From: Ranitomeya imitator
Lineage: Eukaryota
Assembly: GCF_032444005.1 (NCBI RefSeq)
Contig: NC_091290.1
Span: forward strand, 113,584,001 to 113,648,000
Direction of reading: 5' to 3'
DNA length: 64,000 nucleotides
The number at the start of each line of letters is the position of its first letter. Position 1 is the stretch's first letter. This document shows positions 17,512-55,918 of this stretch, piece after piece. The translations under genes were made by a program, and so were the position numbers. The notes beneath the pieces are model-generated. The model saw only the letters and a program-made list of their open reading frames with translations, did no database searches and had not been told where the DNA came from.

Positions 17512-17553
17512 TCACTGGACGTGGGGTCGCGGCTTTAGAATTAATTTGCCCGT
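17512..17553 (-). CDS. CNEP1R1: CNEP1R1 coding exon 6 (TGKLILKPRPHVQ*)
   Basis: Acceptor TTTTTCTTTTGCAG; matches the recalled CNEP1R1/TMEM188 C-terminus. The six exons total 378 nt = 125 aa plus stop. Confidence 0.97.
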   Translation of the reverse strand, partial: TGKLILKPRPHVQ

Positions 17554-17620
17554 CTGCAAAAGAAAAACCACAATAGTGAAGGGCACATTTACAGATGCCG
17601 CTCTGTACTCCCAGAGCGGT

Positions 17621-18242
17621 GACTGAGCCCGCACCGGCGCTGCCCCCAAGACTGAGCCCGCATCGGCGCTGCCCCCGAGACTGAGCCCGCAGCGGCGCTG
17701 CCCCCCCAAGACTGAGCCCGCAGCGGCGCTACCCCCGAGACTGAGCCCGCACCGGCGCTGCCCCCGAGACTGAGCCCGCAGTGGCGCTGCCCCCCCCGAG
17801 ACTGAGCCCGCAGCGGCGCTACCCCCGAGACTGAGCCCGCACCGGCGCTGCCCCCGAGACTGAGCCCGCAGTGGCGCTGCCCCCCCGAGACTGAGCCCGC
17901 AGCGGCGCTACCCCCGAGACTGAGCCCGCACTGGCGCTGCCCCCGAGACTGAGCCCGCAGCGGCGCTGCCCCCGAGACTGAGCCCGCAGCGGCGCTGCCC
18001 CCGAGACTGAGCCCGCAGCGGCGCTGCCCCCGAGACTGAGCCCGCAGCGTCGCTGCCCCCGAGACTGAGACCGCACCGGCGCTGCCCCCGAGACTGAGCC
18101 CACACCGGCGCTGCCCCCGTCACTGAGCCCGCACCGGCATTGCCCCCGTCACTGAGCCCACACCGGCGCTGCCCCCGAGACTGAGCCCGCACCGGTGCTG
18201 CTCCCGTGACTGAGCCCGCACTGGCGCTGCCCCGTGACTGAA
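17621..18242. repeat. 29-bp GC-rich minisatellite (GACTGAGCCCGCAGCGGCGCTGCCCCCGA), about 21 copies, CNEP1R1 intron 5
   Basis: Direct tandem copies. Confidence 0.95.
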
Positions 18243-18481
18243 ACGGGAACACCAGCATTATAACCTGCAGATTAACCCCATATATGCAGGATAACAGCGC
18301 TTTTTAGGAGACAGGTTCTCTTTAACGGTGAATCCGTCAGTGACCTCAGGCTGATGGATGACTCTGTAACTTCCTTGATCTTTCACATAATCTGATTTAT
18401 GACCTTTCCTGTGCTCATAAGTCAGTTTAGAAGAAAGTGCAGAAGACCCTGTGCCCATGCCGTCAGAATGAGCCCATTTAA

Positions 18482-19035
18482 AGGGAACCTGACACCCCCA
18501 AAATGGAAGTTGAGCTAAGCCCACCGCCATCAGGGTCTTATCTACAGTATTCTGTAATGCTGTAGATAAGCCCCCAATGTATCCTGAAAGATGAGAAAAA
18601 GAGGTTAGATTATACTCACCCAGGGGCAGTCCCGATTCTGTTCTGGTCCGAGGGGCGTCGCGGTCCGGAGCCTCCCATCTTCTTACGATGACGTCCTCTT
18701 CTTGTCTTCACGCTGCGGCTCCGGCGCAGGTGTACTTTGTCTGCCCTGTTGAGGGCAGAGCAAAGTACTGCAGTGTGCAGGCGTCGGGAAAGGTCAGAGA
18801 GGGCCAGCAGCGTGAAGACAAGAAGAGGACGTCATCGTAAGAAGATGGGAGGCCCCAGACCGGACCGCGACACCCATCGTACCGGGACCACCCCTGGGTG
18901 AGTATAATCTAACCTCTTTTTCTCATCTTTCAGGATACATCGGGGCCTTATCTACAGCATTACAGAATGCTGTAGATAAGCCCCTGATGCTGGTGGGCTT
19001 AGCTCAACTACCATTTTGGGGGTGTCAGGTTCCCT
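18482..19035. mobile_element. TTAA-target MITE (T2/Kolobok-like)
   Basis: TTAA|AGGGAACCTGACACCCCCAAAATGG...CCATTTTGGGGGTGTCAGGTTCCCT|TTAA, with long fold-back arms. Confidence 0.88.
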
Positions 19036-19447
19036 TTAATGTTAAAGGGAACATGTCAGAAACATCTGATTGATGGGTTAGTGTCTGTGTGCCAGAGCAA
19101 AGGACCTGTCAATCAGACAGAGGAGGGTGCTGAGACAGAGGAAATGGAAGTGCATCATCACTCCCCAATGCACCTCCAGAGTGATGCCCAATACTGTCCA
19201 GCCCTTTATTACTGGCACCAGAGTGGTGCAGAAATAATAATAATAAAAAAAAAGTATACTTACCTTCTGGACTGGTGCCACTCCTCCACTCTCGGCCCCG
19301 TGTCCTGGCTTTGATTGGAGGAGCAGCGCTGGTCCTGGAGGCGAGTATTCATATTTTTTTTTATGTATGCAGCCCCCTGGGGCGACTATTATAAATGGAC
19401 AATTTTGTTAACCTCTACTTAGAACGTTATCAGAGTATAATACGTAC

Positions 19448-19502
19448 ATCGTCACATGACATGTTGTATTCTGCTAGGACCGTCCGACATCGGGCTGCTA
19501 TT
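19448..19502 (-). CDS. CNEP1R1: CNEP1R1 coding exon 5 ((I)[18 protein letters not shown])
   Basis: 55 nt, AG/GT boundaries, phase-consistent. Confidence 0.97.
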
Positions 19503-19714
19503 CTGAGGATTTGGTTAAGAAAGTGAGCGAGTTACAAGTTCAATTAATCTGAGACCAAGGTCCAGATTCTGCACATGGATTTCCTCACTACATAGGTTGC
19601 ACGGATACCCATTTACGGACTCCATCTTGTTCTACATCTCGTCTTTCCTACAGTTTACAGTGATCATCAGATGCAAGAAGCAATCCAGCTCAGTGACAGA
19701 CCATTAAAGGATAC

Positions 19715-19824
19715 ATCGACGGCGCCACCACCCGCTTGTGGATCCCAGCGAAAAACAGCCCTATTAGCGTTATGCAGCTAATTGTGAAGAAGGGATGATT
19801 CCATAATGAGGTGAAGAAGGAAAC
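19715..19824 (-). CDS. CNEP1R1: CNEP1R1 coding exon 4 ([36 protein letters not shown])
   Basis: 110 nt, AG/GT boundaries; hydrophobic segment matches the recalled protein. Confidence 0.97.
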
Positions 19825-19910
19825 CTGGAAAAGAAGAACAGATCAAGGACAGGAATCATACATCCCATGAGTGTACTTAATAGGAAATCCCTTTAAGAAA
19901 AAAGAATTAC

Positions 19911-19984
19911 CTTTTGCGTCTCCGGATCTATGAGCCAGTTCCAGGCCCCGGTAGCAGTACAGACAGACACTACGATGAGAATCA
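19911..19984 (-). CDS. CNEP1R1: CNEP1R1 coding exon 3 ([25 protein letters not shown])
   Basis: 74 nt, AG/GT boundaries, phase-consistent. Confidence 0.97.
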
Positions 19985-20695
19985 CTATTGGGAGAAGACA
20001 GAAGGTGCAGATTATACTACTACAACTTCTCCACCGGATTCACATGTCCTTTATTTAGAGACCAAGCACGGAATGAAGTGTCCGGGTCTCCTAACCTGAA
20101 CTCCTATGAGACTGCTGCGCCCAGGTCAGGTCTGAAGGCAGCCTGTGCTCAGATACTCAGATCGTGACTGTCCAATGTGCGGACGCAGCCTTAGGATATT
20201 ACATGTCCAGCTCAGCCGCAGATTGACACTGACTGTAGTTTGCAAGTATGGCAAAAAGGTTTGCTAAGTATTAGTGTGACTCTCTAATGCACCTTTCTTT
20301 ATAAATAAAAAAAAAAAGTTTTAATTTTTCCTTAAATGGTTATTCCCCAAAAATAAGACCACTCATGGTCTACGGGACTAGCTGAATTGCTGAGCGCAGT
20401 CCCATAGACAATGAATGGAGAGGAGGTCGCGCATGGGTACTTCTCTATTCAGGATGGTCCTAAAGCCTTGATCTCGGTATCGCCGGTGGCCCCAGGAATC
20501 AGCAAGTTATCTTGGGGCTAGGAAATAGCCCCGCAAAAACAAGTTGTAAACCTTTCAGGCTAAAAATCTGCTTGTTTAAATGAGGAGTAAAATTAATTAG
20601 ATTGGGGGCAGGAAATCTGACTTGTGATGTATTTCTCTCCATCTTTGAATGGCACGGAATCTCCTTCCAGAAGCGCCATCATCCTTGTGACTTAC

Positions 20696-20767
20696 TTCTC
20701 CAACGTCCAGTCGCAGGTTGTAAACACGAGACATATTCCGTGAGCCGTCGCTCGAAAGCCTTTAGAT
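20696..20767 (-). CDS. CNEP1R1: CNEP1R1 coding exon 2 ([24 protein letters not shown])
   Basis: 72 nt, acceptor TCTTTCCGTCTAG, donor GTAAGT. Confidence 0.97.
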
Positions 20768-21409
20768 CTAGACGGAAAGACAGATCTGTAAGAGCATAAG
20801 CGCCAAATAGACTACTGTGCGCAACGGGCGATATTACTGGTAAAGACGCTAGGGGACAGATTGCCTATTGCATCCATTCAGATTCCAGTACCGCTGCAGC
20901 CAATCACTGCGGCCATGTGACGTCACCGCTGCAGCCTGTAAATAATCACCAGGAGCAGCGGTGCTGGAGCAGGGTTTGGGAAGCAGAGCTCCATTTGTTA
21001 TTTTTAATCTTATTTTTTAATAGATTTTTTTTTAGACTTCCACATGCAGAATTTTCCAGACTATTATTACATGGTAAACAACAAAAAAAGAGAATGCCTG
21101 AATTGTCGTTTTCAGTTACTGCATGTCCCTCAACAAAAGGGCGATCATGTACCCCAGACTGGTATCATTAGGAACTACAACTCAGCACACATTAAATAAG
21201 CCCTTCCAAAAAATAATAAAGTTAGGAGTCTCGGTATTTCACCGCACGTCAAATGACATGAAAACAAATCCCAAAAATATTATTGCTTGGAATAATAAAA
21301 AAGTTATGGCTCATGTAAGAAGAGGAGGAAGAAAATAATGATAAATTGCCAGAAACATTAACTAGTGGAAGCAGCTGGCGTGTGGCACTGTGTGACGGCA
21401 AAACGTGGA

Positions 21410-22558
21410 GCTTGATGGCCGCATACAGTCTGATGGCCGCACACAGTGCCCGATGGCCGCACATGGTGTCTGATAGCCCCACACGGTGTCAGATGGCCGC
21501 ACACAGTGACTGACGGCCCCACACGGTGACTGACGGCCCCACACGGTGACTGACAGCCACACACGGTGTCAGATGGCCGCACACAGTGACTGACGGCCCC
21601 ACACGGTGTCAGATGGCTGCACACAGTGACTGACGGCCACACACACACGGTGACTGACGGCCACACAGGATGACTGACAGCCCCACACGGTGTCAGATGG
21701 CCGCACACAGTGTCTGACGGCCCCACACAGTGACTGACAGCACCACACGGTGTCAGATGGCCCCACACAGTGACTGACGGACACACAAGGAGTCAGACAG
21801 CCCCACACGGTGTCAGATGGCCCCACACGGTGATTGACGGCCACACACGGTGACTGACGGCCGCATACAGTGATTGATGGCCACAAAGGGTGACTGACGG
21901 CTACACACACAGGGTGACTGATGGCCACACAGTGATTGATGGCCACACAGGGTGACTGACGGCCACACACACACGGTGACTGATGGCCACACACACACGG
22001 TGACTGACGGCCACACACACACGGTGACTGACAGCCACACAGAGTGACTAGATGGCCGCATACAGTGATTGATGGCCACACACACACGGTGACTGACAGC
22101 CACACACGGAGACTGACGGCCACACACGGAGACTGACGGCTACACACGGTGACTGACGGCCACACACGGAGACTGACGGCCACACACGGAGACTGACGGC
22201 CACACACGGTGACTGACGGCCACACACGGAGACTGACGGCCACACACGGAGACTGACGGCCACACACGGAGACTGACGGCCACACACGGAGACTGACGGC
22301 CACACACGGAGACTGACGGCCACACACGGAGACTGACGGCCACACACGGTGACTGACGGCCACACACGGTGACTGACGGCCACACACGGAGACTGACGGC
22401 CACACACGGAGACTGACGGCCACACACGGAGACTGACGGCCACACACGGAGACTGACGGCCACACACGGAGACTGACGGCCACACACGGAGACTGCCGGT
22501 CACACACGGAGACTGACGGTCACACACGGTGACTGACGGCCACACACGGAGACTGACA
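21410..22558. repeat. About 20-bp minisatellite (CACACACGG[A/T]GACTGACGGC) in CNEP1R1 intron 1
   Basis: Degenerate variants at 21410-22080 and a homogeneous block at 22090-22558. Confidence 0.93.
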
Positions 22559-22814
22559 AACACCCTTTAGTTAGTTTATTATATAGATTTAGCAGAATGT
22601 CACAGACTGACACGTTTATTTTGCAGGATAACTAGTTTTAATAACCGCAAATTAAGCAGAAAATCCAAAGAAGTGAAAGCAGCAGTGCCCCACACTAAGC
22701 TTCCACCTCCACAGGTTTCCATGGTAACAGTCACACTCGCAGCGCTCCCCTGGGTGCACTACAAATACACGGCCGCCCCAGTCTCCACACACCCTGCGCC
22801 CCGCTAGTCCGCAC

Positions 22815-22839
22815 CTTCTGCCTGTTCCAGGGAATTCAT
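22815..22839 (-). CDS. CNEP1R1: CNEP1R1 coding exon 1 (MNSLEQAE)
   Basis: ATG AAT TCC CTG GAA CAG GCA GAA G|GTGCGG; matches the recalled N-terminus. Confidence 0.95.
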
Positions 22840-22844
22840 GTCTG

Positions 22845-23095
22845 CCTCACTTCCCGTATTCTTGCCCCTTCATGAAACCCTCATGTAACCGCCTCAGTGA
22901 TTGGTCTACGCTCACCAGCCCATTCATCTGATTGGCTGCAGCTGCTCCGCCCAGCTAGAGCCTCCCGTACGTGTTGTCACGATGACGTCATACGTGCGCT
23001 GCCTTTTACTCAAACGTGTCGAACATCCTTCGCGCCTGTGATTGGACAAGACGGCTGCCCGTCTTTCCCGGAGGAGACTCGTGATTGGCTGCAAT
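22845..23095. promoter_or_regulatory. Probable bidirectional promoter between CNEP1R1 and TIPRL
   Basis: Four co-oriented ATTGG (CCAAT) boxes at 22900, 22931, 23041 and 23084; palindromic CRE TGACGTCA at 22983-22990; ETS-like ACTTCC near 22849; CpG-rich. Confidence 0.75.
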
Positions 23096-23258
23096 GTATG
23101 GAGGCGGGATATCGTGCAGGAAAGGAGGACAGCGGTGCTGATGGTCAGTATGGAGATGTTGTGGCAGGCCGTAACCGGGGCGCGCCGGGAATGTCTCCGC
23201 GTGGCGCCTGCGTGCGGTTCATGAGGCCCTGTGTTCACACTGCGCTTATACAGCCGCG
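23096..23258 (+). other. TIPRL: Putative first (leader) exon of TIPRL; start approximate
   Basis: Lies just downstream of the CCAAT cluster and ends at CG|GTATGT. A matching acceptor lies at 26367/26368. Inferred, no transcript evidence. Confidence 0.5.
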
Positions 23259-23493
23259 GTATGTGTGCGGTACGGCTGCTCTGTGACGGTACAGCGTCCC
23301 TCTGTCTCTGTGCAGCACACTCTCCTGTACTTGGCTTAGATTCTGCCTTCCCTTATTTAAAGGGACAGGACCCCATATTGCTGCATTGGTGTGATCCCTT
23401 AAAGGGATATCCACAGATTGTGACCACATTCTGCCCCTGCAGTCAGCGCAGAGTTTCTAGTCGGACCCCACTACTATCATTGGCTTATCTTAA

Positions 23494-25680
23494 AGTGCAT
23501 CCCGGGGGCGAGGGTGCGAGAGTGCATCCCGGGGGCGAGGGTGCCAGAGTGCATCCCGGGGGCGAGGGTGCCGGAGTGCATCCCGGTGGCGGAGTGCATC
23601 CCGGGGCGAGGGTGCCGGAGTGCATCCCGGTGGCGGAGTGCATCCCGGGGGCGAGGGTGCCGGAGTGCATCCCGGTGGCGGAGTGCATCCCGGGGGCGAG
23701 GGTGCCGGAGTGCATCCCGGGGGCGAGGGTGCCGGAGTGCATCCCGGGGGCGAGGGTGCCGGAGTGCATCCCGGGGGCGAGGATGCCGGAGTGCATCCCG
23801 GTGGCGGAGTGCATCCCGGGGGCGAGGGTGCCGGAGTGCATCCCGGTGGCGGAGTGCATCCCGGGGGCGAGGGTGCCGGAGGGCATCCCGGGGGCGAGGG
23901 TGCCGGAGCGCATCCCGGGGGCGAGGGTGCCGGAGCGCATCCCGGGGGCGAGGATGCCGGAGCGCATCCCGGGGGCGAGGGTGCCGGAGCGCATCCCGGG
24001 GCGAGGGTGCCGGAGCGCATCCCGGGGGCGAGGGTGCCGGAGTGCATCCCGGGGGCGACGGTGCCAGAGTGCATCCCGGGGGCGAGGGTGCCGGAGTGCA
24101 TCCCGGGGCGAGGGTGCCGGAGTGCATCCCGGTGGCGGAGTGCATCCCGGGGGCGAGGGTGCCGGAGTGCATCCCGGTGGCGGAGTGCATCCCGGGGGCG
24201 AGGGTGCCGGAGTGCATCCCGGTGGCGGAGTGCATCCCGGGGGCGAGGGTGCCGGAGTGCATCCCGGTGGCGGAGTGCATCCCGGGGGCGAGGGTGCCGG
24301 AGTGCATCCCGGTGGCGGAGTGCATCCCGGGGGCGAGGGTGCCGGAGTGCATCCCGGTGGCGGAGTGCATCCCGGGGGCGAGGGTGCCGGAGCGCATCCC
24401 GGGGGCGAGGGTGCCGGAGCGCATCCCGGGGCGAGGGTGCCGGAGCGCATCCCGGGGGCGAGGGTGCCGGAGCGCATCCCGGGGGCGACGGTGCCAGAGT
24501 GCATCCCGGGGGCGAGGGTGCCGGAGTGCATCCCGGTGGCGGAGTGCATCCCGGGGCGAGGGTGCCGGAGTGCATCCCGGGGGCGAGGGTGCCGGAGTGC
24601 ATCCCGGTGGCGGAGTGCATCCCGGGGGCGAGGGTGCCGGAGTGCATCCCGGTGGCGGAGTGCATCCCGGGGGCGAGGGTGCCGGAGTGCATCCCGGTGG
24701 CGGAGTGCATCCCGGGGGCGAGGGTGCCGGAGTGCATCCCGGTGGCGGAGTGCATCCCGGGGGCGAGGGTGCCGGAGTGCATCCCGGTGGCGGAGTGCAT
24801 CCCGGGGGCGAGGGTGCCGGAGCGCATCCCGGGGGCGAGGGTGCCGGAGTGCATCCCGGGGGCGACGGTGCCAGAGTGCATCCCGGGGGCGAGGGTGCCG
24901 GAGTGCATCCCGGTGGCGGAGTGCATCCCGGGGCGACGGTGCCAGAGTGCATCCCGGGGGCGAGGGTGCCGGAGTGCATCCCGGTGGCGGAGTGCATCCC
25001 GGGGGCGAGGGTGCCGGAGTGCATCCCGGTGGCGGAGTGCATCCCGGGGCGACGGTGCCAGAGTGCATCCCGGGGGCGAGGGTGCCGGAGTGCATCCCGG
25101 TGGCGGAGTGCATCCCGGGGGCGAGGGTGCCGGAGTGCATCCCGGTGCCGGAGTGCATCCCGGGGGCGAGGGTGCCGGAGTGCATCCCGGGGGCGAGGGT
25201 GCCGGAGTGCATCCCGGGGGCGAGGGTGCCGGAGTGCATCCCGGGGGCGAGGGTGCCGGAGTGCATCCCGGGGGCGAGGGTGCCGGAGTGCATCCCGGGG
25301 GCGAGGGTGCCGGAGTGCATCCCGGGGGCGAGGGTGCCGGAGTGCATCCCGGGGGCGAGGGTCCCGGAGTGCATCCCGGGGGCGAGGGTCCCGGAGTGCA
25401 ACCCGGGGGCGAGGGTCCCGGAGTGCATCCCGGGGGCGAGGGTGCCGGAGTGCATCCCGGGGGCGAGGGTGCCGGAGTGCATCCCGGGGGCGAGGGTGCC
25501 GGAGTGCATCCCGGGGGCGAGGGTGCCGGAGTGCATCCCGGGGGCGAGGGTGCCGGAGTGCATCTCGGGGGCGAGGGTGCCGGAGTGCATCCCGGGGCGA
25601 GGGTGCCAAAGTGCAGCCTAGAACGAGCGTGCCAAAGTGCATCCCGGGGCGAGGGTGCCAGAGTCCAGCCCGGGGCGAGC
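23494..25680. repeat. GC/CpG-rich compound satellite of 27-bp (GAGTGCATCCCGGGGGCGAGGGTGCCG) and 18-bp (GAGTGCATCCCGGTGGCG) units
   Basis: About 2.2 kb of interleaved units; fills most of the putative TIPRL leader intron. Confidence 0.97.
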
Positions 25681-26386
25681 CGCAGGGTTTTACGGTCATG
25701 TGTGGATGTACGTTATTCCCATGTTTGTAGATAGGTATTGTTGAATACTTATTTTCAGAACAAGCACTTTTCCAATTTACAGTGTATTAAACTTTTAGCC
25801 ATTCATGAGAAAACACAACTGTTTACGGCTTGTTGCCTAGGTGACTGACCACTGCTGCTAGTCACAGAATATGCTCAGTGCTTCCAGGCTTTTCTCTATT
25901 GAGACTGTAAGCGCTGGCAGGATCACAGGCTTGCGCTGGTATCTCGTAACCCCAGCCAGCTTCAGAGCGGTTCTTAAAAACAAAACAGCAGTGGTGGTCG
26001 GTCTCCTAGGCAACAAGATGTAAGCAAAAGAAAAGCATTAATTTCTCCGGAACGGCTGCACCTTTTAATAAGCAGTAAATTGCAGAAGTGCTTGTTTTTA
26101 GAAGCAATATCCATCAATGAAGTTGGTAATAATCCTTTTAAGGGAAAAATTAAGGCCGCTCCATTCATCAGATGCGAGTCCACATCGCTGATCATTACTG
26201 CCCGTCTTAGGGCACAGTATACAGTGTCTTGTGGATTTTAGCTCCTTCATGTGGTGCCTTGGTCTCCTACAAAGGTGCATTTTATGTCTATTTATTTTAC
26301 CCCTGATCTTGTTGATGCATTGTCCAGCTGCACGTCTTCTAACAGAACCTCCTTTCTCTGTCTTCAGACCCTGACCGGTTCCAGCT

Positions 26387-27211
26387 ATGATGATTCACGG
26401 ATTCAAAAGTAGCAATCAAGACTTCAGTTTTGGACCATGGAAAGTCACGGCCATCAAAACGCATATTATGAAGTCGGCCGATGTGGAGAAACTAGCTGAA
26501 GAAATGAACATGCCCTGTCTTCCCGAAATGATGTTTGGGGACAACGTCTTAAGGATCCAACACTCCTCCGGCTTTGGGATTGAGTTCACGGCTAAGGATG
26601 GACTGAGAAGGGTGAATAAGAACAAGGGAATGGTCAAAGTCGCCTGTGCTGAGGAATGGCAGGAAAGTCGGTCAGACAGCGAGCACAGCAAAGAAATCGT
26701 GAAGCCCTATGACTGGACATATACCACCGATTACAAGGGCACCTTGCTGGGTCACGACCTGACATTTAATACCGTTCCTACCACCGAACGGATTAATACG
26801 GAAAAACTGAAGGCAAGGGAGCAGATCATGTTTTTCGAGGAAGTGCTGCTGTTTGAAGACGAACTCCACGACCACGGGGTGTCTAGCCTGAGTGTGAAGA
26901 TCAGAGTCATGCCTTCCGGCTTTTTTCTCCTCCTGAGGTTCTTCCTCAGGGTGGACGGCGTCCTCATCCGAATGAACGACACTCGTCTTTACCACGAGTC
27001 TGACAAGACGTTCATGCTGAGAGAATACACGTCGAGGGAAAGTAAAATCAGCAACCTAAGTCACGTCCCCCCGCCGCTCTACACCGAGCCTAATGAAATC
27101 TCTCAGTACTTGCCCATTACGGAAACCATTTACGAAAAGTTAGAATTTCCATCGTTGCAACAGACAGAATTGGGTGACTCTCCCGGTCCCGTAAGCCAAG
27201 CGGCATCATAA
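26387..27211 (+). CDS. TIPRL: TIP41-like protein (PP2A/PP4/PP6 regulator), single coding exon, 274 aa
   Basis: MMIHGF...FGPWK...LPEMMFGDN...[13 protein letters not shown]...[16 protein letters not shown]...[20 protein letters not shown] is the TIP41 family signature. ORF uninterrupted; acceptor CCTTTCTCTGTCTTCAG 19 nt upstream of the ATG; AATAAA at 27758. Confidence 0.97.
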
Positions 27212-28028
27212 GATGGTCTTCAGCAGAAGATACAGACGTAGAAATCCGGAAATGAACCATCGGCGTGCCACGAACCGTCGTCATATGGAAACTGCACGGC
27301 GCACCCTTGCTACGTATGTCGTGTAGGCGTGAAACAATAACCCTCGTAAGATGCCGATGCGGTAACGTTGCCGTATGCTACATCTGTATGCGATCACAAT
27401 CGTTCACTGTGAATATTCTCGCCCCACAAAACATTACACACGGGTGATGCGTGTCTTACATGGGTTTCACCAACACGAGATGCCTTAGTTTGTCTCTGTA
27501 TTTTCATGAGCCGTCCACTCATGATGGAAATATTCTGTGGGTTTGCTGTCCCGTTCCATGATCGACTCCAAGCCGGTCATATAGAAGGCCTCAGAAAACG
27601 GCGTGAGCGAGCGTACCTGTCTCCACTTATTACATATCTGCGGACTTGTACTCAGGAGCTAAGTCCTCCCCCCAAAATCCATCGGGCGCTCACTCCGAAC
27701 CATCATAAAGTATCACACGTAGCCCTTATGCCCCTCTAGAGTTCGTAAAGGTAATTTAATAAAAAAAATTGTGAAAATTGTTGGTATGTGTCTAGGTTTT
27801 TGGTATGTGTCCTATGCCCACTATATTTCCCGATCTATTTCCCTACATGTGCATGTATTTCGGGCTAAAAATCATTTTTGCAATTAGTTTTCATTGAAAA
27901 TGTTGCACCATTTTGCTTTCACGGGCTCTTTGTTTCTCTACGTAATCAACTTTAATATGTTCTGTGGTCATAAATCAGCAGAGAGGAGCTCAGAAAAGAC
28001 AGATAAGAGTGTTGTAGCAAGAATTTAC

Positions 28029-28311
28029 TAGAGATGAGCAGATCGTTTTGTAGGACTTTGATCCAGCGTTCAGGTCTGTGGTATCTGGCGGCTATACAGG
28101 AGACCCCCAAATCACGTACCTTCTGGTTTGATTTGTTGGGGCTGATACAGCATCATCAGTATAACGTGACGCACGGATGACGTCACACCAGCCCTGGCTA
28201 ATCAAACGCCTAGCTGGAAAGTAAGAGATCCGCGGGTCTCCAGTCTAGCCGCCATGGACCACTGACCTGGACGCTGGAGCAGAGTCTTGCAAATCGATCC
28301 GCTCATCTCTA
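28029..28311. mobile_element. hAT-type MITE
   Basis: TIRs TAGAGATGAGCAGATCG / CGATCCGCTCATCTCTA; exact 8-bp TSD GAATTTAC. Confidence 0.9.
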
Positions 28312-29279
28312 GAATTTACCACTTTTAGTAAAACCTTGATGGGTAATACGTGGTAAATTGGTGGAGTTGCCACAACAAATCGTTCTGAATCCACTGAATG
28401 AATGAAGTAACGAGGAATGTGGCCACCATACTTTTTACGGTCTGTGGTGCCAAGTACAGTGCTACTTCACGCGTGGGTCAGACCCTCAGTGGACCCATGA
28501 AGGTCTATAACAAATCTTCACTACACCTATGTGGGCCTTGAGCCCCACATTTATGCATTCAGGAAGAAATGAAGACGAATAGAATGAGTGTACATGATCA
28601 AAGTCTACGAGGCTGATGGAAACGCCACTTAAAATGCCTCTACTCTGCAGATAATGAGGAGGAACCGGGCGGCTTAGAACCCCTCCTAAGTGACTGATGA
28701 CATTTATCACTGTCTTTTGGGTACGTAATAAATGTACACTTTAAAAGGGTTTCTAGGTTGGAAAGCAATCCGGTAGTAACCACGGAATACCGAATCATGA
28801 CAGTGTGCAATGCAATCACTGTCACGATCCCCAAGTACTTGCAGAGCTAGTGGGTGGTTACTTTACCACTTGTATGTGATATGATATGGTCATGTGTCGA
28901 CCAGACTCTCCTCTGCTTCTCACCGTGTTGTATCGAGAATACTGGGTAAGAATATAGTCGGCAAGTGAACAAAGTATGCAATTTACAGACACGGTCACAT
29001 GATGCAAACACAGGGGAATCATGTCAGTGTGCACATTCTGCACTTTCGCAATTTGCAGTCACATTGAGTGATTGCAGAACATTTAGTCCAGAAATACTCT
29101 GTAAAAGTGTCCATAGGGCTGTACTGACTTGTCCTTTTGGCATATGTCCGGCCAGTATAGGTTAGTATACGACTGATCAAAATGGTATGCAGTTGCGTCT
29201 GAGACTTTACTATTTTATCCTGTGGAGTCTATTAAAAAATAAAGTCTACCATAAGAAAAAAAAAAAAGTAAGTGTGTGT

Positions 29280-32200
29280 ATATAGATATGCTCAGTCAGC
29301 TGCTCAAAGAGGTAGTCACAGGGACGCTTTCAGATTACGCTTTCCACTGATTTATTAAAAAATGTGCTGCATAAACCAGTCCAACATTAGCTAAAATATA
29401 CACGGCGTAATGGAAAAACAAGAAAACAAAATGGCGTTTAGTACAGTGTGTGTGGCTGTGGGGTGCACCAGCTCAGGAACTAAAAAAACAAGGTTCAGCT
29501 CTCTTTATCATGAGCACAGCTCTGGCGATCTCTATAGACATGGAGTCCAAAGGATTCACATATACATTCACCCTGGGGTGGAGATATGGTGAACAGCCTC
29601 CCACCCACTCTTCAGATGTTCACCAATACCTAGCCCTATTATGGCCGATTAACCCCTCTCAGCACATAACATGCTAGAGCATACTTCTGGGTTCATATGA
29701 CTGAGGTTAACATCCTCAGTGATACATCTCTCTTCCAGTATTTTACCAGTGAAGTTCACACGCCCCTCTGTCCAAAGCCGCGGGTTTTGGCACTATCAGT
29801 CACTAGATCGGGAAGGCTTCACAGGTCATCTGCGTTATCGTGTAGTTTCCCGGGCCTATGAGCCACTTAGTAGCTGAAGTACTGGAGCGCTAGGGCCCTC
29901 TAGACACCCCGGCATTCTTCCTCTTACTTCAACAGTCAGTGTAGAGAAAGCTGTCTTCTCCTTGGCACTTTGGGACATGAGAATTTGCCAGTATCCTTTT
30001 GTTAGGTCATGGGTGATGTATCTGACTGACCCGGGGCATCGGATATGCATCAAACTTGGACACCTTATTCAGCTTCCTATAACCATTACAAAAACAACCA
30101 TCCTCCACTGGGTTTTAGGGAAAGGACAATGGGGCTGGACCAGCTGCGTCCTGATTCCTCAATGATGCCCAACCTCAACATTTTTCTCACCTCTTTCTAA
30201 ATCGCCTTGCGATGGGCTTCGTGGATTCGATATGGCTTTAGGTTTACCTGCACATGCGGTTCTTGCTCCACAACCTGCGTACATCCCGGCAACTCTGAAA
30301 ACAGGTCTGGATTCCGCTGAAGTAGTTCTTGGCATTGTTGTTTCTGGGTTGGTGATAACGCCTCTGCCACTGTGACATCCATTGTTCCAGCGATTTACAA
30401 TGTGATAAGCTTTCAAAACCTCCCTCTCCCTCATCCCCACCACTATTGCGCTACTGTGACATCCTGACCCTGGCTTCAGGATTGGCCCACATGCACGTAG
30501 CTTCCACCGCTTTCATGTCTCGCCAAGGCTTAAGAAGGTGATGTGGTAATTTATGTTATGGTGATGTGGTAGATGGAGATGTGTTCTCCCATAATAGGCC
30601 AGCCCCTCTTGTTCAAACCACACTTGGACGCTGAAGCATAAGAAGTGCACAAAATGGCCGTTGTACACCGCAGAACCCACTCCCCTGCATCCATGTTTTT
30701 TTACCAGACCATAGAGTGCTTATCTCTTCATCGCTCCACTTGAATTCTTCAGGTTGACGTGGTACACCTGGTAGGGCTTTCTTCTTCCTCTCTGGTGGAA
30801 CTTGTAGTTAACATCACCCAGCTTTTCAACCACTTCATATCACTCCTGTCACTTGGCTGCAAATTTACGTTTGACACTGAGAATCGGTCTAAGGGCTCAT
30901 ACTTGCGAGAAACTCGGATGAGTCTCGCATGGCAATACCCGGAACTGCACCCGACACTCAGGAGCGGAGCGTGCGGGTGCATGTATTGCTATGCGGCCGC
31001 ACACTCTGATCTGAGTGCCGTCAGCAGCGCCAGGTATAAACATGCGAGACTCATCCGAGTTTCTCGCAAGTGAGTATGAACCCTATCATCTACTTTCCAG
31101 GTCTCCTTTGCAGTATCCAGAAGTCCCCAAGGGTGCTTGTTGGAGCCAACATGGACGGTTGATGTATTATAAGAGCAATGAACATTCCTTGAACTCTACA
31201 TAACAGCTAAAATCTACATCAAAGCAATAGACCATTAGCTGTAAATTGTGGTCACACAAGTTCCTGGGGTGTGAAGTCCTGTGTTATTTTAATAGAATAA
31301 AGAGAATCTACATTGTAGATGGACATTGTGTCTCCAACCTCTTGGAGGATGCATAACAGCAGAGACGGGAGTAGGCAATCCCAGTCTCGGCCATCCTTCT
31401 CCCACTACCTTCTTGAGCATTGAAATTGTGGTTTTGTTGAACCTCTCCACCAAGCCTTCCATCTGCGGATAGTACATGGATGTCCTGAGTTGTGTAATCT
31501 GGAGGGCCTTTCACAACTCTCTCATCACTTTAGACATGAAAGGAATTCCTTTGTCCATCAGGATCTCCTTTGGCAGGCCCGTCCATGAAAAAATATAGAC
31601 TAGCTCTTGGGCTATACACCTGGCAGGTGAGTTTCTCAGTAGTATCACCTTCGGGTACAGTGTTGTGTAGTCCATGACCACCATGATATAGTGGTACCCT
31701 CTGAAGGAATTAATCAGGAGTCCGACAAGATCCATGGAAATGCAGTCAAATGGGACCTCTATAATGGGTATTGACACAAAGGGGACTACAAAAGTGAGAG
31801 ACTGGAGCAGTTAGCTGGGAGATGGGACATGACCTGCAAAAGTTAACAATCTCTCCGTGACATTCAGGCCAGTAGAACCTCTGAAGGATCTGCTCTAGGA
31901 TGTTGCCGATACCCACTCAGGACAAGAGAATTGGCCAGGTCGACCACCCTATGCCTATAGGGCCCCAGTACTAACAGTTGCTTTACCTACCCCATCAATT
32001 TAGTAACTCGCTATAGCAAGTCCTCATTTACCGCAAAGTATAGAAACCTGGTTTCGGACCCCGACTTTTGAGCAATCCCATTTAGAATAGTAACATCAAA
32101 CATCCCTTTTAATGTAAGATCCTTCATTTGAGGAGTCCCAAAATCCCGACACCGCCAATTCAGGAATGTTGGCCTCATGGGTCTCTGTCTCCTCATCATC

Positions 32201-37944: not shown

Positions 37945-38103
37945 NNNNNNNNNNNNNNNNNNNNNNNNNNNNNNNNNNNNNNNNNNNNNNNNNNNNNNNN
38001 NNNNNNNNNNNNNNNNNNNNNNNNNNNNNNNNNNNNNNNNNNNNNNNNNNNNNNNNNNNNNNNNNNNNNNNNNNNNNNNNNNNNNNNNNNNNNNNNNNNN
38101 NNN
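37945..38103. other. Assembly gap (159 N)
   Basis: Run of N. Confidence 1.
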
Positions 38104-51013: not shown

Positions 51014-54000
51014 TTTTCTCTTGACGCCCATGACTGCACCACGGAGAGAGGGGATCCGCCCACCAAGGACAGGAAACCTACAGATAAAAAGGCGGTACCT
51101 CTCTCTCGCATCAGTTGGTTTCCTGTCCTTGATGGGAGACCTACAGAAAGCGAATGTCGTTGTGGGAGTCCGGGGCCAATCAGTCCAATTCAGACAGTGG
51201 GGGTCCCCCTGCCTCGGCTGGTGTGGTGACCCGAGGCGCTACTGCTGGGGCTAGTGAGCCTCTAGGGTGCGCGAGGAGATGTGGCAAGGAGATCGCGGCC
51301 ACCTCTCCAGGGAAGAAGCAGCAGCATCCAAGGGGGTTCCCTCTGTGGATGGGAGTTAGCGCACTGCTTCCCCCAAGCGTCAGTCTGTCAGCTGAAGCCC
51401 GGGGGTTCCGGGAACCAGCGTACACGCGCGATGATGCGCGGCACCTTCTTGTGGGCAGTGTTGTTCGTCTGCGCATGCGCGAGATCAGGAACGCGATTTC
51501 GCGCTGTGCATGATGGATATTCGGTCACTGCGCATTCGCGGGATTGGATGCGGTGCAGGCGGCATTTACTGCGCATGCACTGATATAAATAGTGCGGGCG
51601 GGAATCACCGCTATTAAAGGGAAGCATAACTTAGGTCATTGCTTCTCATGAAGCTTGACCAGCGTTCCCCTGCCATGAGCGACCTGGAACAGGCATCACC
51701 CCTATCCAGATCATCACAGCAGCAGCAGCAGCAGAAGCGACGGCCGCAGAAAGGACACCAGGATGTTGCCGGTAAAGGACGCTCGGGATCTCTTCATAGC
51801 AAGGAGTACAGTACAGCGTCCGGCAAGAGGGATAAGCTGATGACAGACGCAGATCATCCCCAACCGGTATTTATGGGTCCGTAAGGTGGTAAGTGATCTC
51901 CGTGATAAGCTCAGGCAAGACTAAGCATAAAGTATGCGCCCTCTGTAGAGAGGATCTTCCTTCTACTTGGGAGAAGAGGCTTTGTAGCGCATGCATACAA
52001 CATAGTGTCTGAAGGGCTTCCCGGGTTCACAGCAGACTGCAAAACCCTGATAGAAAATCAGGTGGAAGATACTTTTAAATCCCTAAAGGGGGGGGGGGGG
52101 TAAGCGAAGAAAGACTAGGCACAGATCCCCAACTCCTGAGTCCAGTGATACGGATAGTGAAGAGGTGGACTCGGATACATCTAATTCTTCTTCATCTTCC
52201 TCTAGGGGTCGTAGCTGTTTTCCTCTAGAAGAGACTGACAGCCTCGTTAAAGCAGTTAGCACTATGGGGCTATCGGACCCTCACCCCAAAAGATCGGTAC
52301 AGGACTAGATGTTGCCATCGCTAAGGCATCTAAAAAATATGCCCTTCCATTCTAGGACATGGGGGTCCTGAAAGATCCCATGGACAAAAAGGCAGATGCT
52401 TTCCTAAAAAGTTCATGGGAGGCAGCCGGGGGAGGGTTAAAACCAGCGGTTGCCGCCGCATGCACATCCCGTTCCCTAATGGTATGGTTAGGCCAATTAG
52501 AAATCCGCCAGAAAGCACTACCAAGAACCACCAGACGTTGGTGGAACTCGGATACCCAGAAGGAGGCACCTAAACCAAAGGCTCTGCCTAGAAACAGCTG
52601 ATGGTACTGGAGCCAGGATGGGGAGCAGCTTAAAAACGAAGTCCTCTCGGGACTCAATATTAAACACCTTACCGGTAATGCGAGGAGCTGCCGCTTTTAG
52701 CAGATGCCTCCGCTGATTCTATCAGACTGTCTGCTAGGTCAGCAGCTTTTTCAAACGCGTCCAGCTGAGCCCTTTGGCTTAAATGTTGGCCAGGGGATCT
52801 CCAAACAAAATCTAAGTTGTGTACAATCCCCTGTGAAGGAGAATTCTTATTCGGACACAGTTTAAACGACATCTTAGAGAAGGCAGATGACAAAAAGAAA
52901 TCACTCCCCTCCCTTGGTTTTCCTTCCTACAGGAGGCTCTTTCGGAGCAAGAGGTTCTTCCGAAGGAAGCCGGAAAAAAACCAAAATAAGAAAAACAAGA
53001 ACAAGGGATTTATGTTTAATAAGAGCCCCACTGACAACAAAAAACCCACCCAATGAATGTTTGCCCCAGGTGGGGGTATGACTGTCCCTCTTTCTCTTTG
53101 CCTGGGAGAAAATTACTAACAGTCCATGGATTTTGGACATAATAAAGTCGGGACTAAAGTTAGGATTTCCCAAACTTCCTCGACCCTCCTTCATGATGAC
53201 ATCCCTGAGATCATCAGAAGAACAACTAGCATTAGAACAAGAAATTAAGGGGCAAGGGGGTTCTCCTGGAAGTCCCCCCTCAAGAAAGAGGAAAAGGATA
53301 TTACTCCCCTCTGTTCCTGAGGAAAAAACCAGATGGGTCCTACTGGACAATTATGAACTTGAAAAGCCTAAACAAATATCTGAATGTTCAGCCGTTCAAA
53401 ATGGAGACAATAAAAACATCAATAAAAATGCTGTTTCCACTTTGTTTTATGGCAGTCCTGGACCTGAAAGACGCTTACTATCACGTCCCTATCCACAAAG
53501 ACCACCAACAATTCCTCAGGATAGCAGTCCTCATCAGAGGGGTGACATGTCATTTCCAATTCTGAGCTCTTCCCTTTGGACTAGCCATAGCTCTGCGAGT
53601 CTTTACCAAACTAGTTGCAGAGGTAATGGCCCACCTGAGGGAACAAGACACCCTGATAGTGCCATACCTTGACAACTTCCTGGTAATAGGCAACTCTCCC
53701 CAACATTGCGAAAGTCGGCTAGAAAGAATCATGCGCTCATTAAAAAGCCTGGGCTGGTTAGTTAACTTAACAAAATCCAGATTGTTGCCGTGCCAAATCC
53801 AGGAATATCTGTGTCTTACTTTGGACTCTGTATGGCAGGAATGCCGCCTTCCATCAGAAAAAGTGCAAAAGATGGTGGGGCTAGTGTCCAGAATGAGGGA
53901 TTTCACCTCCATAACTCTCTGGTAGCGTACCTGAATCACCAGGGGGGTACCTTCTCTGAGTCTGATGGAAGTAACTAAATCAATCTTCCACATAGCCGAA

Positions 54001-55918
54001 GGCAATCTTCAGTTTGTCAGGCCTTCATATAAATGGGGTAGACCATTACAGAGCGGATTTTTCTGAGTCGTTCCCGTCTAAAACAAGGGGAATGAGAATT
54101 GAACCAGGCAGTGTTCATCCAGATCTCACAAAGGTGGGGTGTACCGAGCATAGACCTCTTCGCGAACAACCTAAACAAAAAGGTAGACACCTTTTGCTCC
54201 ATAACACCATTAGGGAGCCCCGTATCACTAGATGCTTTTCTGATTCCTTGGCACCATCAACTAGCGTATGCCTTTCCCCCAATTGCTCTAATTCCAGCAA
54301 TTCTGAGGAAGATTCGGGAAGAACAGAGCTCATGTAATCTTAATAGCTCCGTTCTGGCCGAGGAGGGCATGGTTCTGTTGGATGACGAGGATGTCTATCT
54401 CTGATCCCTGGGTACTCCCGGACCTCCCAAACCTCCTTTCCCAGGGTCCAGTTCAACATCCGCAGGTTGCAAGTTTACACTTGACAGCCTGGCATTTGAG
54501 AGGGAGCTATTAGAAAATAGCGGGTTTTCTCCGGGGCTGGTATCTACCCTTCTACAAAGTAGGAAACCAATTACGACCAGACAGTACGGGAAAATATGGA
54601 AAAAATTCCTGTCATCCTCGGGCGCCAAAATAGGTGAGGAAGTCCCTCTTAATGCCATACTAGAATTCCTACAAAAAGGGTTAGAAATTGGTCTGGCCAC
54701 AAGAACCCTAAAAGTCCATGTAGCAGCGTTGGGGGCTCTATTCAACTACGATTTGGCGAGAAATCGGTGGATTTCAAGGTTCATCAGAGCAGCCGGGAGA
54801 TCAAGACCTCTTCCTGTGCGAAACACACCTCAGTGGGATTTAAATTTAGTCCTGAAAGCCGTGACTAAACCTCCATTTGAACCATTGGCGGATGTCCCAT
54901 TAAAATTTTTATCCCTCAAAACATCTTTGCTGGTCGCTCTCACTTCCGCAAGTAGAGTTAGCGACATTCAGGCTCTGTATGTATGTATCTGCTACCCCCC
55001 CCCCCCCCTTTTTACTCAATTCCTGGATGATAGGGTTGTTCTTAAAACAGACCCAGCCTACCTCCCAAAAGTAGCATCCCGATTTCATAGGACACAAGAG
55101 ATATCTCTCCCCTCCTTTTGTCCTAACCCCAAAAACAAGGAGGAAGAGTCCTTACACACATTGGATGTTAGGAGATGCCTGATGCATTACATAGAAGCCA
55201 CCAGAGAGAGTAGGGAGGATGGCTCTCTTTTTGTGTGCTTTCAGGGTCCCCGGAAGGGGAAGAAAGCCTCCAAGGGCACCCTGGCAAGATGGATCACGGA
55301 CGCCATCAGCCTCTCATACTCATCAAGTGGGGTACCCGTCCCGGGAAATGTGAAAGCGCACTCAACGAGAGCAGTAGCAACCTCTTGGGCGGAGAAGGCT
55401 TCAATTGATCAGATATGTAGAGCTGCTACCTGGTCCTCAGCATCTACATTCTATAAGCACTATAGATTGGACCTTATCTCCTCTTCGGACCTTACCTTCG
55501 GTAAAAGGGTTCTGGAAGCGGTGGTCCCTCCCTAAATGTAGAATCTCTGCAATTCTCTCCGTAGTGCCGTCATGGGCGTCAGAAAAAAATATAGTTCTTA
55601 CCGATAACTGTATTTCTCTGAGCCCATGACTGCACCCGTACATTCCTTCTCTTCACATATGGGTGTACACATTAATATAATGTCTATGCTAAATACCTAA
55701 ATAAATAGCCACGCGGTATCTTGGTTAAAACTTCAAGTAATGATAGACTTAGATTTTATTCTTTAAGCTCCCATCATGCTCTAGTAAAGAACTGATGCGG
55801 GAGAGAGGTACCGCCTTTTTATCTGTAGGTTTCCTGTCCTTGGTGTGCGGATCACCTCTCTCTGTGGTGCCGTCATGGGCTCAGAGAAATACCGTTATCG
55901 GTAAGAACTTTATTTTTT
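51014..55918 (+). mobile_element. DIRS1-type tyrosine-recombinase retrotransposon, structurally complete but with frameshifted ORFs
   Basis: Inverted terminal repeats 51014-51116 and 55790-55918; internal complementary region 55553-55638 matches both termini. Gag-like (LKDPMDKKAD), RT (LDLKDAYYHVP, LPFGL, YLDN), RNase H, MT-like (IDLFAN...AYAFPP) and YR pieces. T-rich junctions, no TSD. Confidence 0.95.
54729..55535 (+). pseudogene. DIRS tyrosine recombinase, C-terminal catalytic portion
   Basis: LTSASRVSD, LDVRRCL, KAHSTRAVATSWA, ATWSSASTFYKHYRLD; the upstream part is in another frame. Confidence 0.88.

What the first reader, a model, noticed from the sequence alone, without database searches (positions are those of the whole stretch)
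26368..27765. Intact, intronless TIPRL: probable retrogene relocated next to CNEP1R1
Seen: a full-length 274-aa TIPRL ORF with no introns, stops or frameshifts, and a strong splice acceptor 19 nt before the ATG. Known: mammalian TIPRL is multi-exon and lies on a different chromosome from CNEP1R1/HEATR3 in human. Inference: a retrocopy that acquired a new spliced leader and stayed under selection, possibly replacing the parental gene.
Basis: partly seen in the sequence, partly recalled or inferred. Interest (0 to 1): 0.75.

Follow-up and report, generated by a model that had tools for sequence, protein, structure and literature searches.

The report
Ancient TIPRL retrogene beside CNEP1R1
In this frog the gene for the phosphatase regulator TIPRL is an intron-free copy made long ago from its own mRNA; it now runs off the neighbouring CNEP1R1 gene's two-way promoter, is shared by all sampled frogs and probably by salamanders, and seems to have replaced the original seven-exon gene.

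Summary
Window 26387-27211 (+) is an uninterrupted 274-aa TIP41/TIPRL ORF, and a used splice acceptor lies 19 nt before the ATG.

cDNA-type contigs of this species from four studies cover only 26368-27777. They carry a poly(A) tail, and their leader matches window 23114-23143. The real junction is therefore 23143|26368, not 23258|26368.

The non-coding exon 1 lies about 250-300 bp from the start codon of CNEP1R1 on the opposite strand. Four CCAAT boxes sit between them, which fits a bidirectional promoter.

- **Shared architecture:** Mixophyes, Xenopus tropicalis and Ascaphus have the same layout. The CDS is also single-exon in axolotl and Pleurodeles.
- **Ancestral state:** a caecilian and chicken keep a 7-coding-exon TIPRL with identical intron positions at a different locus (GPR161-like / SFT2D2- or TBX19-like neighbours).
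- **Selection:** dN/dS among frogs is 0.04-0.07, and the PP2Ac-binding residues are kept.

So this is a very old (frog-wide, probably Batrachia-wide) functional retrogene, most likely an "orphan" that replaced its parent.

It is a new example of a known kind. The scan has noted other parent-replacing retrogenes in this genome (MARCHF6, LZTFL1, SRPK1). I could not test loss of the parent or the position of the salamander gene.

The parts
22815..22839 (-). CNEP1R1 coding exon 1 (MNSLEQAE plus one base, followed by a GT donor); the annotated gene spans about 17512-22839 on the minus strand
   Evidence: Translation. The gene with Pfam PF09771 (Tmemb_18A) lies at L005 1126-6453(-), which is window 17512-22839 (offset checked).
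22840..23069 (.). Shared head-to-head (bidirectional) promoter region. It holds inverted CCAAT boxes (GATTGG) at 22899, 22930 and 23040; a fourth at 23083 lies in exon 1. A TGACGTCA motif sits near 22983. The region has CpG-island-like composition.
   Evidence: Four GATTGG on one strand within 190 bp, against 30 in the whole 64 kb. GC 0.57 and CpG o/e 0.87-0.89. Sequence. The block aligns to the Mixophyes and Ascaphus loci at the same spacing from the CNEP1R1 ATG.
23070..23143 (+). TIPRL non-coding exon 1 (5' end approximate; supported from at least 23094 in this species and from 23070 by a relative's transcripts)
   Evidence: Transcript contigs of a related frog align to 23070-23143 and then jump to 26367/8. 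Own-species contigs carry up to 50 leader letters that match the sequence ending at 23143.
23144..26367 (+). 5'-UTR intron (GTCAGT donor, AG acceptor). It contains a 2.2-kb minisatellite at 23494-25679 (27/45-bp units, 76-78% GC).
   Evidence: No contig of the four runs covers the intron apart from 30-40-nt repeat-like scraps (table 8).
26368..27777 (+). TIPRL exon 2, the retroposed body: 5'UTR 26368-26386, CDS 26387-27211 (274 aa plus stop), 3'UTR 27212 to about 27777, poly(A) signal 27758-27763
   Evidence: Contigs of 1436-1474 nt from four studies span 26367-27777 and end in 12-22 untemplated A.

Best explanation
This is the working TIPRL (TIP41-like, PP2A-family phosphatase regulator) gene of this frog, and it began as a processed mRNA copy. 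The copy landed about 3 kb from the CNEP1R1 start, in head-to-head orientation. Divergent transcription from the CCAAT-box, CpG-rich CNEP1R1 promoter supplies a short non-coding exon 1. That exon is spliced (23143|26368) onto an acceptor 19 nt before the retrocopy's ATG. The mRNA is polyadenylated about 12 nt after AATAAA at 27758. Shown here: the intronless CDS, the splice, the poly(A) end, the conserved head-to-head layout in four frog lineages including Ascaphus, the multi-exon gene at another locus in caecilian and chicken, and strong purifying selection. Inferred: that retroposition rather than stepwise intron loss made it; that promoter sharing drives its expression; that one event before the frog-salamander split produced both the frog and the salamander genes; and that the parental gene was then lost.
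For: Intact TIP41 ORF. The residues whose mutation impairs PP2Ac binding (D71, I136, T138, F180, M196, D198, R200; PMC4973239) are all kept. A single-exon CDS next to a minus-strand CNEP1R1 (PF09771) occurs in this species' two assemblies, Mixophyes, X. tropicalis and Ascaphus. The CDS range equals the ORF length in axolotl and Pleurodeles. The caecilian gene spans 20 kb and the chicken gene 7.4 kb; each has 7 coding exons with matching boundaries and is flanked by 7tm_1 and T-box or Got1 genes. The acceptor 15-19 nt before the ATG is conserved in all four frog lineages. Exon 1 and the promoter are alignable in Mixophyes and Ascaphus, about 300 bp from the CNEP1R1 ATG. Spliced, polyadenylated cDNA contigs come from four studies and from a related species. 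dN/dS is 0.04-0.07. The protein tree follows the species tree with ordinary branch lengths. Transcription of head-to-head retrocopies from a neighbour's bidirectional promoter, and replacement of parents by retrocopies, are both documented routes (PMC5470649).
Against: No poly(A)-tail remnant or target-site duplication can be shown, as expected after roughly 300 My. There is no detectable 3'UTR homology to the caecilian or chicken gene. No salamander DNA was available, and no CNEP1R1 is called within 10 kb of the salamander CDS, so a shared insertion site is unproven. Absence of a parental copy or its remnant in this genome was not tested at the DNA level. Promoter sharing rests on geometry and motifs, not on a transcription assay. 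The CNEP1R1 transcription start was not mapped.
Confidence: 0.85

Rival explanations
1. Two independent retropositions. Frogs and salamanders each replaced TIPRL by a separate retrocopy, and only the frog copy lies beside CNEP1R1.
For: No CNEP1R1 is called within 10 kb of the axolotl or Pleurodeles CDS. The tree leaves frogs, salamanders and caecilians as an unresolved three-way split. The scan notes several other parent-replacing retrogenes in this genome, so the process recurs in amphibians.
Against: A single event is more parsimonious. Salamander introns and intergenic spacers are roughly ten times longer, so a 10-kb view says nothing about position.
Confidence: 0.12
2. The retrogene coexists with a surviving parental TIPRL elsewhere in this genome, so it is an extra copy and not a replacement.
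For: The genome itself could not be searched. Only annotated proteins were seen.
Against: About 17 frog and 2 salamander entries among the strong hits each give one TIP41-like protein, and every one examined is the intronless form. The very low dN/dS and ordinary branch lengths fit a sole essential copy.
Confidence: 0.08
3. There was no retroposition. The ancestral gene moved by a DNA rearrangement and lost all its coding introns by recombination with cDNA. Alternatively the copy is an assembly or cDNA-contamination artefact.
For: No poly(A) remnant or target-site duplication is visible. Complete intron loss is a known process.
Against: Loss of all six CDS introns together with a change of locus is the classic signature of retroposition. 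An artefact is excluded, because the same structure with the same neighbours occurs in two assemblies of this species and in three other frog genera, and genomic flanks run continuously into the ORF.
Confidence: 0.04

Closest known systems
Human 'orphan' retrogenes (Ciomborowska et al. 2013, PMC3548309; Carelli et al. 2016 as summarised in PMC5470649)
   Same: An intronless, mRNA-derived copy under strong purifying selection stands in for a multi-exon parent that survives only in outgroup lineages.
   Different: The lineage (frogs, probably all Batrachia) and the gene (TIPRL) differ. I found no paper linking TIPRL with retrogene or intronless structure in amphibians. Loss of the parent is not yet shown at the DNA level.
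Retrocopies transcribed from a neighbour's bidirectional promoter (Carelli et al. 2016: about 11% of expressed mouse/human retrocopies; PMC5470649 fig. 3D)
   Same: Head-to-head orientation, a gap of a few hundred bp, a CpG- and CCAAT-rich promoter, and a newly evolved non-coding first exon with a 5'UTR intron.
   Different: Here the arrangement has held since the frog common ancestor, and it serves what appears to be the only copy of a housekeeping gene.
HAP40 (F8A) single-exon gene of amniotes (PMC7725122)
   Same: A clade-wide switch from a multi-exon to a single-exon gene.
   Different: A different clade and gene. I saw only that paper's abstract, not its details.
Canonical vertebrate TIPRL (structures 5D9G and 5W0W)
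   Same: 85% identical and gap-free over residues 10-256, with a full TIP41 domain and the PP2Ac-contact residues kept.
   Different: Only gene structure and location differ: 1 coding exon instead of 7, and a CNEP1R1 neighbourhood instead of GPR161/SFT2D2.

Membership tests
TIP41/TIPRL protein family | Full-length TIP41 domain (PF04176) above the curated threshold | tested here: met
   228.6 bits against a cut-off of 25, profile positions 1-173 of 174.
TIP41/TIPRL protein family | Residues whose mutation impairs PP2Ac binding are conserved (D71, I136, T138, F180, M196, D198, R200) | tested here: met
   All seven are identical. The list comes from PMC4973239. N68 is T in the frog.
Processed retrogene | All parental introns are absent from the coding region | tested here: met
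   Six CDS introns at shared positions in caecilian and chicken (after about aa 35, 95, 128, 172, 204, 225). None is present in the window ORF.
Processed retrogene | Genomic location differs from the parental locus | tested here: met
   Parent: 7tm_1 - TIPRL - Got1 or T-box. Frogs: CNEP1R1 head-to-head with TIPRL.
Processed retrogene | Poly(A)-tail remnant and flanking target-site duplications | tested here: inconclusive
   Only a short A8 run overlaps the live AATAAA signal. No target-site duplication search is meaningful at this age. There is no 3'UTR homology to the parent.
Orphan (parent-replacing) retrogene | No parental copy remains in the same genome | not testable with these tools
   No whole-genome search of this assembly is offered. 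Indirectly, there is one TIP41-like protein per batrachian species among the strong hits.
Functional gene (as opposed to a retropseudogene) | Transcribed, processed and under purifying selection | tested here: met
   Spliced, polyadenylated contigs from four studies. dN/dS 0.04-0.07.
Bidirectional promoter pair | Head-to-head genes less than 1 kb apart, with CpG-rich, CCAAT-rich intervening DNA | tested here: met
   CNEP1R1 ATG at 22839 (-) and TIPRL exon 1 from about 23070-23094 (+). CCAAT cluster. CpG o/e 0.87-0.89.
Bidirectional promoter pair | Both transcripts depend on the shared element or are co-expressed | not tested
The CNEP1R1 transcription start was not mapped.

The most novel reading that the evidence does not exclude
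A single retroposition in the common ancestor of frogs and salamanders, after caecilians split off, placed TIPRL beside CNEP1R1, and the seven-exon parent was then lost. That would be a rare genomic change marking Batrachia, and the oldest layer of a recurrent amphibian habit of replacing essential multi-exon genes with their retrocopies. The scan's notes on this genome list MARCHF6, LZTFL1 and SRPK1 as younger cases.
Probability: 0.5. Interest if true: 0.55.

Novelty: new member of a known kind. Interest (0 to 1): 0.45.

Why it matters
TIPRL controls the disassembly and recycling of PP2A-family phosphatases and is a conserved single-copy gene. In this case its retrocopy has apparently served as the only copy for some 300 My (the date is from memory of published timetrees, not tested here). 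It has done so on a borrowed promoter, which gives a clean natural experiment in how retrogenes acquire regulation. If the salamander gene sits at the same site, the insertion is a discrete character that supports the frog-plus-salamander grouping. For annotation, it warns that single-exon TIPRL models in amphibians are genuine and not processed pseudogenes. It also shows that pipelines which require a parent in the same genome, such as the X. tropicalis screen in PMC3136929, will miss such genes.

Tried and rejected
- The coelacanth protein lookup returned nothing on record.
- The axolotl and Pleurodeles loci came without DNA and with no neighbour within 10 kb, so salamander position stays open.
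- A BLASTN comparison of the frog 3'UTR with the caecilian and chicken 3' flanks found nothing.
- Rfam found nothing in 20000-30000.
- The scan's notes hold nothing on TIPRL, GPR161, TBX19 or SFT2D2.
- I wanted to inspect the ancestral GPR161-SFT2D2 interval in a frog. The longest GPR161 exon ORFs (263 and 241 aa) are too short for the word search's length window to reach full-length frog GPR161, so I ran no further search on it.
- I did not run the large representative search. Clusters at 50% identity would merge any conserved paralogue, and it cannot see pseudogenes.
No clear exon was recognised in a quick look.
The junction was read from loose ends instead.
- No human contig was fetched or compared.

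Full report
**Observation**

The window holds one long ORF at 26387..27211 on the + strand: 274 codons with no stop or frameshift.
- It matches the Pfam TIP41 family over the whole profile, at E 4.5e-68 and 228.6 bits against a cut-off of 25.
- It aligns without a gap to residues 2-248 of the solved human TIPRL chain 5W0W_B at E 4.7e-138.
- A polypyrimidine tract and an AG at 26366-26367 put an exon start at 26368, 19 nt before the ATG.

**Which genome**

The window is identical, base for base over 20.8 kb, to record CM064367.1 of assembly GCA_032444005.1. Earlier scan notes call this genome a poison frog. A second assembly, GCA_958301615.1, encodes exactly the same protein in the same setting.

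**Expression and transcript structure**

Transcript contigs from a related frog (94% protein identity) align to window 23070-23143, then jump to 26367/26368, and run through the ORF into the 3'UTR.

In this species, contigs of 1436-1474 nt from four runs of four different studies cover only 26367/26368-27777.
- The letters before 26367 read as the sequence ending at window 23143.
- The letters after 27777 are 12-22 untemplated A.
- Nothing but 30-40-nt scraps lies on the intron side (table 8), so these runs are cDNA.

The mRNA is therefore:
- exon 1, from about 23070 or 23094 to 23143, non-coding;
- an intron at 23144-26367 with a GTCAGT donor;
- exon 2 at 26368 to about 27777, cleaved 11-14 nt after AATAAA at 27758-27763.

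The intron contains a 2.2-kb minisatellite at 23494-25679, with 27/45-bp units and 76-78% GC.

**Neighbourhood**

CNEP1R1 (Pfam PF09771) lies on the minus strand at about 17512-22839. Its first coding exon reads MNSLEQAE from 22839 downward and ends in a GT donor.

Only about 230-255 bp separate that ATG from TIPRL exon 1.
- The gap holds four inverted CCAAT boxes on one strand within 190 bp. The window-wide density of 30 in 64 kb predicts about 0.09.
- The region has GC 0.57 and CpG o/e 0.87-0.89.

This is the layout of a bidirectional promoter.

**How old, and what it came from**

| Lineage | TIPRL coding structure | Neighbours |
|---|---|---|
| Mixophyes | single exon | CNEP1R1, head-to-head |
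| Xenopus tropicalis | single exon | CNEP1R1, head-to-head |
| Ascaphus (basal frog) | single exon | CNEP1R1, head-to-head |
| Axolotl, Pleurodeles | annotated CDS range is exactly ORF length (831 bp for 276 aa plus stop), so single-exon | no DNA returned; no neighbour within 10 kb |
| Caecilian Rhinatrema | 20 kb, 7 coding exons | 7tm_1 receptor gene and a T-box gene |
| Chicken | 7.4 kb, 7 coding exons | 7tm_1 gene and a Got1/Sft2 gene |

- In the frogs, the acceptor 15-19 nt before the ATG is conserved.
- The exon 1 and promoter block aligns in Mixophyes and Ascaphus at the same distance of about 300 bp from the CNEP1R1 ATG.
- The caecilian and chicken genes share their intron positions, after about residues 35, 95, 128, 172, 204 and 225. 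From general knowledge, their neighbourhood matches the GPR161-TIPRL-SFT2D2-TBX19 order of human 1q24.
- The multi-exon gene at the GPR161 locus is therefore ancestral for tetrapods. The intronless gene beside CNEP1R1 is derived.
- Loss of all six introns together with a change of locus is the signature of retroposition.
- A protein tree of 34 vertebrate TIPRLs follows the species tree. Amphibians are monophyletic (support 90/84), branch lengths are ordinary, and frogs, salamanders and caecilians form an unresolved three-way split.

This fits a retrocopy arising from the amphibian gene around the base of Batrachia. It does not fit an old paralogue.

**Function**

- Pairwise dN/dS among the intronless genes of this frog, its relative, Mixophyes, Xenopus and Ascaphus is 0.04-0.07 where dS is not saturated.
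- The residues whose mutation impairs PP2Ac binding are D71, I136, T138, F180, M196, D198 and R200 (PMC4973239). All are unchanged.

The gene is thus the functional TIPRL, a regulator of PP2A-type phosphatase catalytic subunits.

**Replacement of the parent**

Among the strong hits of the protein search, every frog (about 17 species) and both salamanders contribute one TIP41-like protein. Every one whose locus I examined is the intronless form. That makes replacement likely but does not prove it, because I could not search the genome DNA for a second locus or for decayed exons.

**Mechanism proposed**

A processed TIPRL mRNA copy inserted a few kb upstream of CNEP1R1, in the opposite orientation. 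Divergent transcription from the CNEP1R1 promoter provided a start site and a donor. A cryptic acceptor just before the retrocopy's ATG completed a spliced 5'UTR.

The copy then took over, and the parent was lost. Use of a neighbour's bidirectional promoter and parent replacement are both described classes (PMC5470649; PMC3548309).

**Literature**

No paper in the library links TIPRL with retrogenes or intronless structure, or discusses frog tiprl gene structure. The X. tropicalis retrocopy survey defined retrocopies against parents in the same genome (PMC3136929). It could not have found an orphan.

**Limits**

- No poly(A) remnant, target-site duplication or 3'UTR homology to the parent can be shown.
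- Salamander position is unknown.
- Parental loss is untested at the DNA level.
- Promoter sharing is inferred from geometry and motifs.
- HEATR3 was not verified.
No retrogene-versus-parent dN/dS was therefore computed.

**Verdict**

It is a frog-wide, probably Batrachia-wide, functional retrogene. It is a new example of a known kind and of moderate interest.

Noticed in passing
window 26387-27777: The TIPRL exon shows strongly GC-biased change in this species' lineage. Polarised with a related frog and Mixophyes, the CDS has 40 AT-to-GC against 8 GC-to-AT changes. It has 43 CpGs against 12 and 15 in the relatives, and GC3 of 0.62 against 0.42 and 0.50. The 3'UTR has CpG o/e 1.17 against a window mean of 0.60. 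This suggests biased gene conversion or a germline-unmethylated domain. An earlier scan note reports GC-enriched silent sites in this genome's MARCHF6 retrogene too.
   Followed up: partly
window 23494-25679: A 2.2-kb minisatellite (27/45-bp units, about 44-85 copies, 76-78% GC, CpG o/e about 0.85) fills two thirds of the TIPRL 5'UTR intron. It creates 700-800-aa pseudo-ORFs in several frames on both strands.
   Followed up: partly
window 22016-22557: A tandem array of a 20-bp unit (CACACACGGAGACTGACGGC), 27 copies at 92% match, inside what should be CNEP1R1 intron 1.
   Followed up: no
window 27300, 27714, 27760: Differences between cDNA contigs and the assembly: C>T at 27300 in one study, an extra G after 27714 in two studies, and an extra A in the A-run at 27760 in one. 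These are probably polymorphisms.
   Followed up: no
window 52000-55600: Long stop-free stretches with a reverse-transcriptase or recombinase-like look (for example a 376-aa stretch at 54405-55532) suggest a retroelement downstream.
   Followed up: no
window 37945-38103: A run of N (assembly gap or mask).
   Followed up: no
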